A DNA stretch of 64,000 nucleotides, taken from contig OZ116708.1 of the NCBI GenBank assembly GCA_964199315.1, positions 23,250,001 to 23,314,000 of the forward strand. Reading direction: 5' to 3'. Origin of the DNA: Orbicella franksi. Its lineage: Eukaryota. The notes under the pieces were generated by a model. The model was given only the letters and a program-made list of their open reading frames with translations, did not search any database and had not been told where the DNA came from. Both the position numbers and the translations under genes were made by a program. Within the stretch, counting starts at the first letter, position 1. Every line of letters begins with the position of its first letter. Positions 55,666-59,662 of the stretch are shown here, one piece after another.

Positions 55666-56630
55666 GAAGTTATTTTTGCTGAACATGTTTACCTTGTGAA
55701 TTACAAGGGTTACTGGCTGATAACATTCATACTCATACTCACTATGTCAATAAATCACTCTGAAACGGAAAACAGTACCATTTCTTTGTTGAACTAAACA
55801 AAACTAACTGCTTCCATGGGCTTAAAATATCGCATTGGTGGACAAATCGCGTGGTGTGGCGGTGCCGCTCTACTTCGAAAATATATTTCTTTTTCACTAT
55901 CACTATCAAGTCCACTTCGCAGTTTTCTTGTGTAAGATAATACCGAGAAACGAGAGTTTCACTACAATGTTGCAAATGACCCATTTTGTTGCGATGCACC
56001 CAGTTTTGGCTGAAATTTTGCCGCCGTATTTACATTAACAATTACAAACTTTACTCTGATTGGATATATACCCCCACTATGTAAATAGTTCACTCCTGAA
56101 CTGAAAATAATACCGTTTCGTTTCTGAGGAAACGAAACAACAAGTTATTTTTGTTGAACGTGCTTACCTTGTGAATTAAAATCGTTACTGGCTGATAACA
56201 TTCATACTCACTATTGCAATAAATCACTATGAAACGGAAAACAGTACCATTTCTTCGCTGAACTAACCAAAACGAACTGCTTCCATCGGTCTAAAATGTC
56301 GCATTAGTGGACAAATCGCGTGGTCTGGCGGTCTCTCTACCTCCAAAATAAACTTCCTTTTCACTATTACTATCCGAATAGAAGTCCAGTGTGTAGTTTT
56401 CTTGTGTATTTTAATAACGAGAAACGAGAGTTTCACTCGTAATTCTCCATTTTCGAATAAAGCAGAAATTGAAATGTTCGGAACGCCACATTTGTTGCGA
56501 TGACCGAATTTCCACCGTATTTACATTAACAATTACGAACTTTACTCTGATTTGATATTACAAATCACTATGTAAATAGTTCACCCCTGAACTGGAAACA
56601 ACGCCGTTTCGTTTCTGAGGAAACGAAACA
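55666..56630. repeat. Direct tandem duplication, two ~480-bp diverged units
   Basis: Units ~55666-56140 and ~56141-56630; both start aagttattttt.g.tgaac and end gtttctgaggaaacgaaacaa. Confidence 0.85.
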
Positions 56631-56900
56631 AAAAGCTATACAGTAGAACCTCCGGTTGCGACCACCTCTTGTAAGCGACCACCTCTCCTCAGCGACCAGT
56701 TTTCCAAAATACCAAAAGTTTCCGAGTCAAATCACTATATTTGGAACCTCTTGTAAGCGACCACCTCTCGTAAGCGACCGCGACCACTTTTAGAGCCAAA
56801 AGTCTGAAATTTTCTTTTGTTTTTAACCTCCCGTAAGCGATTACTTGACAAAGAATAGAGTCAAAATTGGATAATAAGGTGTTGTAACAATAGCGCAATA

Positions 56901-57073
56901 GAGCGTTTTCACTCACGTGGTCAGGAGCCATGCAAATTTATTGAAACAAAAGGAAGTGTTTACACAAGAAAAGAGTTCAGTTCACACAGGATTGGTTTGG
57001 TACACCAACATGGTCGCCATTTCATTGTTTTGGAACAACAACATGGCTGCCGTGACGTCATGTGAAAACGCTC
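56901..57073. mobile_element. TA-flanked MITE
   Basis: TA|gagcgttttcac ... gtgaaaacgctc|TA. Confidence 0.8.
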
Positions 57074-57139
57074 TATACTAAAGGTCTAGATAGCAGCAGA
57101 CATGTAAATATTTTAAGGAAAACGACCAATTTTTTAAGT

Positions 57140-57183
57140 TTGCAAGACATGTTTCGACAGAGCTTCTGTCATCTTCAGTTGAA
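57140..57183 (-). ncRNA. Second, identical hammerhead motif on the minus strand in the inverted pseudo-LTR copy
   Basis: Exact reverse complement of 58344-58387. Confidence 0.72.
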
Positions 57184-57202
57184 TGAATGATTACAAAGCA
57201 AG

Positions 57203-58255
57203 TTGAATAACCAAATTGATGGTGTGGCCATGGGGTCTCCCCTTGCTCCCGTATTAGCCAATCTTTTTATGGGGCATCATGAAAAACTATGGTTGGAGAA
57301 TTTTCAATGCTCTAAAATTTTATTTTATCGTAGGTATGTTGACGACACTTTTTGTTTATTTCACTCGGAGCACGATGCTGTTATATTTTTTGACTACATT
57401 AACTCTAGGCACCCCAACATAAGGTTTACTATGGAAAAAGAACTTAATCGCAAATTACCCTTTCTAGATGTTCTTATTGATAATAGTGACACTAATTCCT
57501 TCCTAACTAGGGTTTACCGTAAGAAAACCTTTACTGGGTTATTAACTAATTATTTTAGCTTCACCTCGTACTCATACAAAGTAGGTCTCATTAGGACTCT
57601 TGTTGACAGGGCCTACAAGATCAACAACACTTGGTTGGGGTTACACGAGGATATAACCAAGCTTACTGAAATTCTCAAAAAGAACCTTTTCCCTGCCCAT
57701 TTAATTGAAAAAGTGGTTAACCGTTACATCACTGGGACCCATAGCAATCATTGTCCCCGGGGCTACCCCCTTACCACCTCGCCCACGTTTTACTTTAAGC
57801 TGCCATACATAGGCCATTTTTCTGTCATCACTCAGAAGAAGATTCGACACTTAATCAAGCGCTATTGTAATGATTTAGACATCAAATTAGTTTTTTCTTC
57901 CTTCAAGATAGGTAACCTTTTTGGTGTGAAAGACCCTATCCCCGACGGGCTTCGTTCACGTGTGGTTTATAAGTTTACATGTGCGGGCTGTAATGCCTGT
58001 TATGTCGGCGAAACCTCCCGACATTTTTCCACACGCGTACGTGAGCACTTAGCCGTTGATAGGGCCTCTCACATCTTCAAACATCTTCAGAATTCTGAAC
58101 GTTGTCGCTCATTGTGTTCAATAGACTGCTTTCATATTTTAGATCACGCCACTACCAGCTTTCAACTCAAGATAAAGGAGGCTATTCATATTCAAAAAGA
58201 ACTACCTTCCCTCAATCAGCAATTACACCATGTAAATCTAAAATTATCCTTTTAA
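57203..58255 (+). CDS. Penelope-type reverse transcriptase (C-terminal part) + GIY-YIG endonuclease, N-terminally truncated
   Basis: QIDGVAMGSPLAPVLANLFM (RT motif B), YRRYVDDTF (YxDD), LPFLDV, YRKKTFTG, then VVYKFTCAGCNACYVGETSRHFSTRVREH (GIY-YIG with the PLE CxxC...H zinc motif). No internal stops. The listed start is a TTG inside the inverted repeat, not a true start; retroelement coding sequence begins at about 57211. Confidence 0.9.
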   Translation: MNNQIDGVAMGSPLAPVLANLFMGHHEKLWLENFQCSKILFYRRYVDDTFCLFHSEHDAVIFFDYINSRHPNIRFTMEKELNRKLPFLDVLIDNSDTNSFLTRVYRKKTFTGLLTNYFSFTSYSYKVGLIRTLVDRAYKINNTWLGLHEDITKLTEILKKNLFPAHLIEKVVNRYITGTHSNHCPRGYPLTTSPTFYFKLPYIGHFSVITQKKIRHLIKRYCNDLDIKLVFSSFKIGNLFGVKDPIPDGLRSRVVYKFTCAGCNACYVGETSRHFSTRVREHLAVDRASHIFKHLQNSERCRSLCSIDCFHILDHATTSFQLKIKEAIHIQKELPSLNQQLHHVNLKLSF

Positions 58256-58343
58256 CTTACACCTTTTCACGTTCTTGTTGTTACTATTTGTCTTAATTAG
58301 CATTTTTGCCTACTTATTATTCAACTTGCTTTGTAATCATTCA

Positions 58344-58387
58344 TTCAACTGAAGATGACAGAAGCTCTGTCGAAACATGTCTTGCAA
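58344..58387 (+). ncRNA. Minimal type I hammerhead ribozyme motif in the PLE 3' pseudo-LTR
   Basis: CTGAAGA (58349-55), extra T, stem II GACAGA-agc-TCTGTC (58357-71), GAAA (58372-75), 2-bp stem III within palindrome ACATGT, cleavage triplet GTC ending 58381, short stem I TTCAA / TTG(C)AA. Confidence 0.78.
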
Positions 58388-58434
58388 ACTTAAAAAATTG
58401 GTCGTTTTCCTTAAAAGCTCTATACTAAATAGTA

Positions 58435-58621
58435 CAGTGGAATCCCGCCTTACGACCACTCCATTAATACGACCACCTCGTTATTACGGCCACTTTATTC
58501 TGGCCCAAAAAAAGCTCAGTCAGTCATTTTCTTATTCAAAAAACATCTTTAATACGTCCACCCCGTTAATACGACCAATTTTCCATGGCCCGAAGGTGGT
58601 CGTATTAGCGGGGTTCCACAA
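58435..58621. mobile_element. pogo/Tigger-like MITE (CAGTGGAA TIR, TA TSD), copy 1
   Basis: TA|cagtggaatcccgccttacgaccac ... gtggtcgtattagcggggttccacaa|TA. Confidence 0.85.
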
Positions 58622-59474
58622 TACAAGAGACTGTTATTTCTCAATGGCAAGTGCACTATTGCTTCTCGAAACTGACTTTTGACATCAATAGAACATTTAA
58701 AACATTGAGTAAGTCTCTGCAGTTACCATACGCTAAAGAGGCAAAGTTTTCTCCCAATATGGTCTTAGCTCTCGTAAGCAACCACCTAGGCTTGACATTT
58801 TGGGTGGTCGCTAACGGGAGGTTTGACTGTAGTTGTAGAACCAACCTGTTTTAAAGAAAGGTACTGGATATCAAACAGGCGAACAAAAATGACAAGATCA
58901 TCTCACTAGGCAATTATGACTAGATTTACCAACGATTTCCCATAAGTAACCTTTTAATGCACAGAGAATATATAGATAGTGTATTTTGAAACATGAGACT
59001 GCCGGGTTATTATAAACCTTCCCGGGTTCTTCACCCTTTCTGATTTTGTACATGAAAATTGCCAATTCGTTAACCACTAGTAAACTGAAGTTACAAATGT
59101 AAAGGGTATCGGTACATTTGAATGGAAAACGTTTTCAGTTACCGAAAGTCTCAGTTCTTATCCTTCACCAAAGCCGAACATTGAAAAAGGCGAACGTACT
59201 TCGGGTGAATTAGACGTTACTAGAAAAATCCGTAGTTTTTCAACTTTTAGGCAGTAATAGCTGGTTTATTTTAAGGGTGCATGCAGACACGTGTACATGA
59301 AAGCATCGTCTGGCACGTAGAACGTATCTTAGAATGCGAAAAGAAAGATAAGTAAATTGGCCTTTCTATGAAGGCAAATAAATTATACAGTTATTTCACT
59401 TACAAATTATAAATCACAAAACACAACCCGCGCATAGCGTAAGTTAATTGAGGCGGGTATTGTAATAACTGATA

Positions 59475-59662
59475 CAGTGGAACCCCGGCTTACGACCACC
59501 CCATTAATACGACCACCTCTTTATTACGGCCACTTTATTCTGGCCCAAGGAAAAGCTCAGTCAGTCATTTTCTTTTTCAAAAAACATCTTTAATACGACC
59601 ACCCCGTTAATGCGACCAATTTTCCATGGCCCGAAGGTGGTCGTATTAACGGGGTTCAACTG
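59475..59662. mobile_element. Same MITE, copy 2
   Basis: TA|cagtggaaccccggcttacgaccac ... ggggttcaactg|TA. Confidence 0.85.

What the first reader, a model, noticed from the sequence alone, without database searches (positions are those of the whole stretch)
57111..58416. Two hammerhead ribozymes facing each other on opposite strands around a Penelope RT/endonuclease ORF
Seen: both arms of the perfect 100-bp inverted repeat contain CTGAAGA-t-[GACAGA agc TCTGTC]-GAAA-c-at-GTC|, a complete hammerhead core with a 2-bp stem III lying in the palindrome ACATGT. Established: Penelope-like elements carry minimal hammerheads in their pseudo-LTRs, and such short palindromic stem III forms are thought to cleave as dimers. 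Inference: here each strand carries one sense ribozyme plus its exact antisense. A read-through transcript from either direction could therefore fold into a 100-bp duplex closing a ~1.1-kb loop. That would sequester the ribozyme and create a Dicer/ADAR substrate, a self-silencing insertion. The extra U between A9 and stem II is a core variant worth testing.
Basis: partly seen in the sequence, partly recalled or inferred. Interest (0 to 1): 0.78.

Follow-up and report, generated by a model that had tools for sequence, protein, structure and literature searches.

The report
Ordinary Penelope insertion with twin hammerheads
This is one recent, 5'-shortened copy of a coral Penelope-like retrotransposon laid down head-to-head with a short inverted copy of its own 3' end, so the element's usual small hammerhead ribozyme motif lands on both strands; it is a textbook example of a published architecture, not a new device.

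Summary
The arms 57111-57210 and 58317-58416 are 100% complementary. Each carries a complete minimal type-I hammerhead motif, with the cut site after C58381 on + and after 57146 on -.

The insertion spans 57083-58416 and is flanked by a 13-bp target-site duplication. It holds a 1,206-bp 5'-truncated copy (RT motifs 4-7 plus GIY-YIG endonuclease). Joined to it is a 128-nt inverted 3'-end copy that carries the 28-nt Penelope "tail".

Head-to-head pairs are the default for this clade in this genome: 26 (-)(+) pairs and no (+)(-) pairs among the first 100 motif hits.

The ribozyme motif has comparative support. There are 416 genomic hits against 0 control hits. At least 8 helix II versions occur, 96.6% paired, with compensatory changes at 5 of 6 pairs. 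The "extra U" is universal (0 hits without it) and is a published hallmark of Penelope hammerheads.

The hairpin idea holds thermodynamically (-167.7 kcal/mol) and is already published for Drosophila Penelope. RNA reads show no read-through at this locus, no pile-up of ends at the cut site and no A>G excess.

Verdict: a new member of a known kind. Earlier notes of this scan describe the same kind elsewhere in this genome.

The parts
57070..57082 (.). Left copy of the 13-bp target-site duplication (GCTCTATACTAAA)
   Evidence: Identical 13-mer at 58417-58429, immediately outside both ends of the insertion.
57083..57110 (-). 28-nt PLE 'tail': the unit sequence that follows the pseudo-LTR end, present only at this end of the insertion
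   Evidence: Its reverse complement matches 27 of 28 nt of the sequence right after the 5' pLTR in the full-length copy L031. BLAST maps the inverted copy as far as the tailed end.
57111..57210 (-). Inverted copy of the last 100 nt of the element (left arm of the inverted repeat)
   Evidence: 100% complementary to 58317-58416.
57146..57178 (-). Minimal type-I hammerhead motif on the - strand; cut expected 3' of the C at 57146
   Evidence: Descriptor hit; exact reverse complement of 58349-58381.
57211..58416 (+). 5'-truncated PLE copy, 1,206 bp, with a tail-less 3' end
   Evidence: 99.2% identical to unit positions 1632 onward of the full-length copy. RNA reads from longer copies diverge exactly at 57210 into the element's upstream sequence (loose ends).
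57203..58255 (+). Open remnant of the RT-EN ORF: RT motifs 4-7, linker, and GIY-YIG with CCHH
   Evidence: It aligns with the C-terminal part of the 824-aa ORF of L031.
58172..58416 (+). Pseudo-LTR-equivalent 3' region, which is repeated at both ends of full-length copies
   Evidence: Direct repeat of about 245-248 nt with a 2,595-bp unit in L031.
58349..58381 (+). Minimal type-I hammerhead motif on the + strand; cut expected between 58381 and 58382
   Evidence: helix II covariation among sister families.
58377..58379 (+). AUG inside the ACAUGU helix III palindrome; it is the start codon of the 824-aa ORF in full-length copies
58417..58429 (.). Right copy of the 13-bp target-site duplication

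Best explanation
The region 57083-58416 is a single recent insertion of a canonical, C-terminal-endonuclease Penelope-like element (Penelope/Poseidon-like) in a stony-coral genome. It was made by reverse transcription primed from both ends of the staggered target cut. One end gave the 1,206-bp 5'-truncated + copy, which starts at the tail-less RT start site. The other end gave a 128-nt inverted copy, which starts 28 nt further along the template and so carries the 'tail'. The two cDNAs were joined head-to-head at 57210/57211, and repair of the stagger left a 13-bp duplication.

The last ~70 nt of every copy contain the family's minimal type-I hammerhead: a 3-bp helix I, a bulged U, a 6-bp helix II and a 2-bp palindromic helix III. 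An insertion with two outward-facing 3' ends therefore carries one hammerhead motif on each strand automatically. The two motifs are not a functional pair. Any one transcript holds only one sense motif, and with a 2-bp helix III that motif should need a second sense copy (a dimer through ACAUGU) to cleave.

Shown here: the anatomy, the family context and the covariation. Inferred from published PLE biochemistry: two-ended priming. Not shown: self-cleavage.
For: Anatomy of the insertion:
- The inverted repeat is perfect over 100 nt.
- A 13-bp target-site duplication flanks it, and the 28-nt tail matches the unit sequence downstream of the pLTR.

Family context:
- Full-length copy L031 has 245-248-nt direct pLTRs, a 2,595-bp unit and an 824-aa ORF. 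The ORF has a DKG motif, RVT_1 (E 2e-8, above the cut-off) and a GIY...YVG motif with CCHH. An inverted truncated copy sits next to it.
- At least 429 candidate copies exist, and the 44 that were scored are 99-100% identical.
- Head-to-head (-)(+) pairs: 15 among those 44 hits; 26 pairs and no (+)(-) pairs among the first 100 motif hits.
- Exactly one tailed end in 15 of 15 pairs of this family and in 5 of 5 pairs of sister families.

Hammerhead motif:
- 118 + 298 genomic matches to the core pattern, against 0 for the reversed control.
- Helix II is 96.6% paired across 15 distinct sequences, with compensatory changes at 5 of 6 pairs. 0 of 500 shuffles reach the observed values (2 of 500 for further pair types), and slid registers give 34-44% pairing.
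- A version of the motif without the bulge has 0 hits.

Literature:
- Min-HHR features and opposite-strand pairs (PMC4209133).
- Inverted copies and a one-ended tail (PMC8557442).
- A PLE protein cleaves and extends both strands, and two RT start sites define the tail (PMC11167929).
Against: - No Rfam hammerhead model matches.
- Helix I is only 3 bp (CAA/UUG), and comparative support fades beyond the first 2-3 pairs.
- The active monomer fold (-3.8 kcal/mol) is not the minimum-energy fold (-8.2).
- PolyA RNA-seq shows no accumulation of read ends at 58381/58382.
- Two-ended priming is inferred from the anatomy and from in vitro work on a lizard element, not observed here.
- Clade assignment rests on motifs read by eye, with no phylogeny.
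Confidence: 0.9

Rival explanations
1. Self-silencing hairpin. Read-through transcripts of this insertion fold into the 100-bp duplex. That masks the ribozyme and feeds Dicer or ADAR, so the insertion works as a built-in silencer of the family.
For: The arm duplex is predicted at -167.7 kcal/mol. In the minimum-energy fold of the whole 1,334-nt RNA, all 100 arm nucleotides pair arm to arm. RNA-seq reads cross inverted joints of other head-to-head copies, for example 57905/57950 with 23 reads and 19 start points in X23, so some palindromic copies are transcribed. In D. melanogaster lines transformed with Penelope, siRNAs map to inverted regions of rearranged copies (PMC3681739).
Against: At this locus the flanks are nearly silent in three raw polyA RNA-seq runs. 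Depth is 0-0.6 at 56900-57021 and at 58608-58700. The few reads next to the insertion break off into other sequence, so they come from other repeat copies. The changes seen are a mix (X23: A>G 5, T>C 3, G>A 7, C>T 5) and mostly match sister-copy variants, with no A-to-I signature. No small-RNA data were available. Even if true, this would be a side effect of the insertion mechanism and a published idea.
Confidence: 0.15
2. The hammerhead motif is conserved but does not act as a self-cleaving ribozyme in vivo. It would be kept for another RNA role, such as template recognition by the RT, RNA dimerisation through ACAUGU, or control of the start codon that sits inside helix III.
For: No pile-up of read ends at the cut site. 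The active fold is not the minimum-energy fold and helix I is only 3 bp. Published min-HHRs cleave poorly in vitro (PMC4209133). Catalytic mutants of the Anolis PLE hammerhead do not affect insertion in vitro, and no RNA-seq ends were found at its site (PMC11167929). The AUG of the 824-aa ORF lies 2 nt before the cut, so cleavage would behead the mRNA.
Against: All catalytic-core positions are intact in 416 motifs spread over several diverged families, while helix II covaries freely. This is the pattern expected for selection on the hammerhead fold itself. PolyA RNA-seq at about 30x family-level depth is a weak assay for a cleavage product.
Confidence: 0.3
3. Assembly artefact: the palindromic junction was created by mis-joining reads from different copies of a 99%-identical repeat family.
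For: PLE palindromes are known to trouble assemblies (PMC8557442). No DNA reads were laid on this locus.
Against: A perfect 13-bp target-site duplication flanks the whole structure. Dozens of independent loci share the same architecture, each with its own duplication. RNA-library contigs and reads show analogous short-inverted-arm junctions at other copies (joints 57131/58191 and 57138/58142).
Confidence: 0.03

Closest known systems
Minimal hammerheads of metazoan Penelope-like elements (Cervera & de la Pena 2014, PMC4209133)
   Same: [quoted passage not shown] That paper also notes pairs on opposite strands 100-700 bp apart, and reports motifs in cnidarians.
   Different: This is a specific coral family whose helix III is the 6-nt palindrome ACAUGU, which contains the ORF's start codon. 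Helix I is at the short end of the range (3 bp). No activity data exist.
Standard PLE insertion architecture (Evgen'ev & Arkhipova 2005 and Arkhipova 2006, as summarised in Craig et al. 2021, PMC8557442)
   Same: 5' truncation; pseudo-LTRs in full-length copies; an inverted 5'-truncated copy next to the 5' end that forms inverted repeats; a 30-40-bp tail at only one end; a target-site duplication.
   Different: The tail is 28 nt here. In this genome the one-tailed-end rule is strict in the sample examined (20 of 20 pairs), whereas the literature says 'often'.
Poseidon PAc of Anolis carolinensis, reconstituted in vitro (PMC11167929)
   Same: The protein cuts and extends both DNA strands. Reverse transcription starts at two adjacent internal sites whose spacing equals the tail. 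The ORF start overlaps the hammerhead, so the cut lies downstream of the AUG. No RNA-seq ends were found at the cut site.
   Different: In vitro, the two start sites were used alike on the top and bottom strands. Here, the two ends of one insertion always differ. In PAc the AUG lies at the start of helix II, 26 nt before the cut; here it lies in helix III, 2 nt before the cut.
Penelope of Drosophila virilis, and rearranged copies in transformed D. melanogaster (PMC3681739)
   Same: Rearranged copies with long inverted repeats were proposed, and partly shown, to yield dsRNA and siRNAs that map to the inverted regions.
   Different: No small-RNA evidence here, and this particular locus appears not to be transcribed by read-through.

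Membership tests
Penelope-like element, canonical C-terminal EN+ type | Reverse transcriptase domain | tested here: met
   RVT_1 E 2.1e-8 at 34.6 bits, above the 29.6 cut-off, in the full-length ORF. E 1.3e-6 in the window remnant. The YVDD motif can be read.
Penelope-like element, canonical C-terminal EN+ type | C-terminal GIY-YIG endonuclease with CCHH motif | tested here: inconclusive
   Pfam GIY-YIG is below its cut-off (15-16 bits against 22.6). Read directly, VVY...(11 aa)...YVG with C-x2-C and two downstream His, plus R, E and N, are present. No structural or profile confirmation was run.
Penelope-like element, canonical C-terminal EN+ type | DKG motif upstream of the RT (DKT in the Hydra clade) | tested here: met
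   PDKGNG is present in the 824-aa ORF. This argues against the Hydra clade (PMC8557442).
Penelope-like element, canonical C-terminal EN+ type | Pseudo-LTRs (partial tandem) in full-length copies | tested here: met
   L031 has direct repeats of 248 nt at 99% identity, spaced 2,595 bp apart.
Penelope-like element, canonical C-terminal EN+ type | Inverted 5'-truncated copy next to the 5' end | tested here: met
   Seen in the window, in 15 pairs among 44 hits, and in 26 (-)(+) pairs against 0 (+)(-) pairs among the first 100 hits.
Penelope-like element, canonical C-terminal EN+ type | [quoted passage not shown] | tested here: met
   A 28-nt tail at 57083-57110 only. Exactly one tailed end in 20 of 20 pairs.
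Penelope/Poseidon clade (as against Neptune or Nematis) | No extra Zn-finger-like CX2-5CxxC motif in the RT-EN linker; placement by phylogeny | tested here: inconclusive
   No such motif is seen by eye in the linker. No tree or reference set was used.
PLE minimal type-I hammerhead | Conserved core: C3-U4-G5-A6-N7-G8-A9, G12-A13-A14, A15.1-U16.1, H17 | tested here: met
   CUGAAGA ... GAA-A ... U-C, read directly and found by the descriptor.
PLE minimal type-I hammerhead | [quoted passage not shown] | tested here: met
   U58356. 416 clade motifs carry one nucleotide there and 0 lack it.
PLE minimal type-I hammerhead | Helix II closed by G10.1-C11.1 and supported by covariation | tested here: met
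   96.6% of cells paired, and 5 of 6 pairs show changes on both sides. The G-C closing pair was fixed by my search pattern, so it is not informative.
PLE minimal type-I hammerhead | Helix I next to the core | tested here: inconclusive
   3 bp here (CAA/UUG). Across the families, pairs 2.1-1.1 and 2.2-1.2 always form, 2.3-1.3 forms in 10 of 15, and support fades beyond that.
PLE minimal type-I hammerhead | Short palindromic helix III that allows dimers | tested here: met
   The ACAUGU palindrome. In a co-fold of two 71-nt copies, the 6-bp intermolecular helix forms together with both helix II hairpins.
PLE minimal type-I hammerhead | Self-cleavage at H17 | not testable with these tools
   The only indirect test was RNA-seq, which showed no accumulation of read ends at 58381/58382.
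Rfam hammerhead families (Hammerhead_1, _3, _II, HH9, HH10) | Match to a curated covariance model | tested here: not met
   No hit at E<=10 on 2.5 kb or on a 141-nt slice. This agrees with the need for a special descriptor reported in PMC4209133.

The most novel reading that the evidence does not exclude
In vivo, the two DNA ends of one PLE insertion may be primed in a coupled and asymmetric way. One end would always use the tail-less RT start site and the other the start site 28 nt further along the template. This fits a dimeric RNP whose two protomers sit on adjacent sites of the template. Support: 20 of 20 head-to-head pairs have exactly one tailed end, and in 4 of 5 near-symmetric pairs the tailed arm is 12-18 nt shorter at its inner end. 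In vitro work saw no strand difference in start-site use.
Probability: 0.3. Interest if true: 0.45.

Novelty: new member of a known kind. Interest (0 to 1): 0.2.

Why it matters
It matters little as a discovery. Every element of the finding (PLE hammerhead, bulged nucleotide, dimer-type helix III, facing copies, tail, hairpin-to-siRNA idea) is already in the literature.

Its value is as a clean and very young example. The arms are 100% identical, the target duplication is intact, and hundreds of sister copies are 99-100% identical. It comes from a cnidarian genome in which several diverged sister families share one ribozyme core. Three things follow:
- the set gives natural covariation data for helix II;
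- it gives a strict one-tailed-end statistic that bears on how PLEs prime both DNA strands;
- it gives a case where the start codon lies inside helix III, so that cleavage and translation of the same RNA exclude each other.

Tried and rejected
- Rfam scans at a permissive E-value, on 2.5 kb and on 141 nt, gave no hammerhead family. The only hits were chance ones (mir-360 at E 9.2, rli22, PCA3_2). I rejected these as irrelevant and used a purpose-built descriptor and genome pattern searches instead.
- I checked whether the 27-28 nt between the left duplication and the left arm was untemplated filler. It is the PLE tail, so the filler reading was rejected.
- I looked for an ADAR signature and for locus-specific read-through in RNA reads and found neither. 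Reads cannot be assigned to this copy, because sister copies are 99% identical.
- I looked for short inverted arms beside seven apparently single copies and found none. Singles have 0 or 1 tail, so the 'exactly one tail' rule holds only for pairs.
- I considered a long-range helix I (UUUGUA pairing with UGCAAA), which RNAfold prefers and which stays paired in one sister subfamily. It leaves 8-13 unpaired nucleotides next to C3, which does not fit a hammerhead core, so I treat it as a competing or closing helix. This is not resolved.
- The idea that the tailed arm always trails the tail-less arm on one template fails in 4 of 15 pairs.
- I did not run the large protein searches, because the protein's identity was not in question.

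Full report
**Observation**

The window holds a perfect inverted repeat, 57111-57210 against 58317-58416: 100 nt, 100% complementary, 1,106 nt apart. Read directly, the right arm on the + strand contains:
- CUGAAGA at 58349-58355;
- one unpaired U;
- a 6-bp helix (GACAGA/UCUGUC) with the loop AGC;
- GAAA;
- C-AU-G-U-C, ending at C58381.

The left arm carries the exact reverse complement, so the same motif reads on the - strand from 57178 down to 57146.

I wrote a minimal-hammerhead descriptor and ran it over the whole window on both strands. It required the core boxes, an optional bulge, a helix II of at least 4 bp, A15.1...U16.1, a non-G at position 17 and a helix I of at least 3 bp. It returned only these two sites, and none in 100 shuffles.

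Rfam's hammerhead models do not detect the motif, even at E<=10. This fits the published need for a special descriptor for this class (PMC4209133).

**Anatomy of the insertion**

- A 13-bp target-site duplication, GCTCTATACTAAA, lies at 57070-57082 and 58417-58429.
- Next to the left duplication, 57083-57110 is not filler. Its reverse complement matches 27 of 28 nt of the sequence that follows the pseudo-LTR in a full-length copy. This is the Penelope "tail".
- The inverted copy therefore spans 57083-57210 on the - strand: 28 nt of tail plus 100 nt.
- The + copy spans 57211-58416 and ends without a tail.
- ORF 57203-58255 matches RVT_1 and, weakly, GIY-YIG. It covers only the C-terminal ~350 of 824 residues.
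- RNA reads from longer copies diverge exactly at 57210 into the element's upstream coding sequence, which confirms the truncation point.

**The family**

The genome is 497 Mb. Earlier scan notes and the run labels indicate a stony coral.

- The last 187 nt of the element have at least 429 candidate matches. The 44 that were scored are 99-100% identical.
- On the - strand of locus L031 there is a full-length copy. It has direct pseudo-LTRs of about 245-248 nt, a 2,595-bp unit and an 824-aa ORF.
- That ORF has a DKG motif, RVT_1 above Pfam's cut-off and a GIY...YVG block with CCHH.
- The ORF has no CxC motif and no linker zinc finger visible by eye. This points to the Penelope/Poseidon type rather than Hydra, Naiad, Neptune or Nematis (PMC8557442). 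I ran no tree, so the clade assignment is provisional.

**Facing copies are the rule, not a peculiarity of this locus**

- Among the 44 scored 3'-end hits, 30 form 15 (-)(+) pairs with their 5' ends facing each other.
- Among the first 100 places, I counted 26 such pairs and no (+)(-) pair.
- In all 15 pairs of this family, one outer end stops at the tail-less site and the other at the tailed site.
- The same holds for five independent pairs of two sister families, giving 20 of 20.
- Copies without an inverted partner can have 0 or 1 tail.

The literature describes exactly this architecture:
- inverted 5'-truncated copies next to the 5' end, and a 30-40-bp tail often present at only one end (PMC8557442);
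- "dual min-HHRs ... ~100-700 bp ... in opposite strands" (PMC4209133);
- a purified PLE protein that cleaves and extends both DNA strands and starts reverse transcription at two adjacent internal sites whose spacing equals the tail (PMC11167929).

The most economical account is two-ended target-primed reverse transcription, followed by a head-to-head junction. The twin hammerheads are then an automatic consequence.

**Is the hammerhead motif real?**

Two genome pattern searches fixed only the core boxes, the bulge position, G10.1/C11.1 and the helix III palindrome. They gave 118 + 298 matches, against 0 for the reversed control. The matches fall into at least eight versions of helix II, for example GACAGA/UCUGUC, GGCAU/AUGCC, GGAUAC/GUAUCC, GAUGUU/AACAUC, GAUCGU/ACGAUC, GGAUGA/UCAUCC and GUCUC/GAGAC.

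I aligned 16 representatives (15 distinct sequences) and counted pairs:
- Helix II is 96.6% paired, with changes on both sides at 5 of its 6 pairs.
- For the whole structure, the observed values were reached by 0 of 500 shuffles for four of the five measures, and by 2 of 500 for further pair types. Slid registers give only 34-44% pairing.
- Helix I is supported only for its first two or three pairs. Here it is CAA/UUG.

A bulge-less version of the pattern has no match in the genome. The "extra U" is therefore universal in this clade, and it is one of the four hallmarks listed for PLE hammerheads (PMC4209133).

The active monomer fold (-3.8 kcal/mol) is less stable than a competing fold (-8.2). 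In a co-fold of two copies, the 6-bp ACAUGU intermolecular helix forms together with both helix II hairpins. This agrees with the published view that these motifs act as dimers and cleave poorly in vitro.

Each strand of this insertion has only one sense motif. The two facing motifs therefore cannot dimerise with each other on one transcript.

**The hairpin and self-silencing inference**

The duplex is predicted, trivially. The arm duplex is -167.7 kcal/mol, and all 100 arm nucleotides pair arm to arm in the minimum-energy fold of the 1,334-nt RNA.

RNA reads came from three raw polyA RNA-seq runs and one contig set. They show the following:
- The family is present in RNA libraries, with a 3'-biased depth that mirrors the abundance of 5'-truncated copies.
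- Most reads carry sister-copy variants rather than this copy's letters.
- The flanks of this locus are almost silent, and reads near the edges break away into other sequence.
- No place shows an accumulation of molecule ends, so there is none at 58381/58382.
- The changes are a mix, with no A>G excess.
- Reads do cross inverted joints of other copies (57905/57950: 23 reads, 19 start points in X23). Some palindromic copies are therefore transcribed and could form hairpins.

The concept that rearranged Penelope copies with inverted repeats give dsRNA and siRNAs is already published, and siRNAs were mapped to such regions in transformed D. melanogaster (PMC3681739). At this locus the idea is neither supported nor excluded, and it is not new.

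**Extra observations**

- The AUG of the 824-aa ORF is the AUG inside ACAUGU, 2 nt before the cut site.
- The peptide that starts there (MS-C/Y-K-L/F-K...VV.F-L/F-K, running on through the tail) is conserved across the sister families.
- The last 35 nt of the element therefore serve three roles at once: the 3' strand of helix I, the RT start region and the ORF's first codons.
- Cleavage at the 5' pseudo-LTR would remove the start codon. A comparable overlap is reported for the Anolis element, where the cut lies 26 nt after the AUG (PMC11167929).

**Verdict**

It is a young, typical insertion of a coral PLE family with the typical PLE hammerhead: a new member of a known kind. Earlier notes of this scan describe the same kind elsewhere in this genome. 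I treated them as leads only and repeated the tests on this locus.

The natural copy L031 served only as a coordinate reference.

Noticed in passing
L003-L034 (pairs of the window's family); L035/36, L045/46, L047/48, L061/62, L041/42 (sister families): In 20 of 20 head-to-head PLE pairs, exactly one outer end carries the 28-31-nt tail. In 4 of 5 nearly symmetric pairs the tailed arm is 12-18 nt shorter at the inner junction. Single copies can have 0 or 1 tail. In vitro work on another PLE reported no strand difference in start-site use.
   Followed up: partly
window 58377-58379; L031 4514 (- strand): The start codon of the 824-aa RT-EN ORF is the AUG inside the helix III palindrome ACAUGU, 2 nt before the predicted cut. 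The N-terminal peptide encoded by the last 35 nt plus the tail is conserved across sister families, so cleavage and translation of one RNA exclude each other.
   Followed up: partly
window 57905/57950, 57966/58177, 58142/58389 (coordinates of joints seen in reads that come from other copies): PolyA RNA-seq reads join opposite strands at these unit positions (23 reads with 19 start points for the first, in run X23). At least one other head-to-head copy is therefore transcribed through its palindromic junction.
   Followed up: no
window 58423-58619 and 59463-59660 (also 56638-56785): A repeated element of about 200 bp, 89-95% identical between copies, with internal 21-nt inverted arms (58458-58478 / 58594-58614). 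It looks MITE- or SINE-like. The PLE sits right at the edge of one copy. The weak mir-360 hit (E 9.2) is just this hairpin.
   Followed up: no
window 55667-56640: Two to three direct repeats with a period of about 470 bp (86-92% identical blocks, spacing 467-491), just upstream of the insertion. Nature unknown.
   Followed up: no
L035/36, L037/38 (C1, about 1.63 and 1.66 Mb); L056/57, L058/59 (C3, about 0.61 and 0.67 Mb): Four loci carry the same sister-family head-to-head pair with identical flanks and target duplication. This is a segmental duplication that copied an existing PLE palindrome, not four separate insertions.
   Followed up: no
G000-wide: At least eight diverged PLE lineages in this genome share an identical hammerhead core, bulge and ACAUGU helix III, but have different, fully paired helix II sequences. 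Most reads in RNA libraries carry the AGU-loop / UUAUAA subfamily letters, not those of the window's AGC-loop subfamily.
   Followed up: partly
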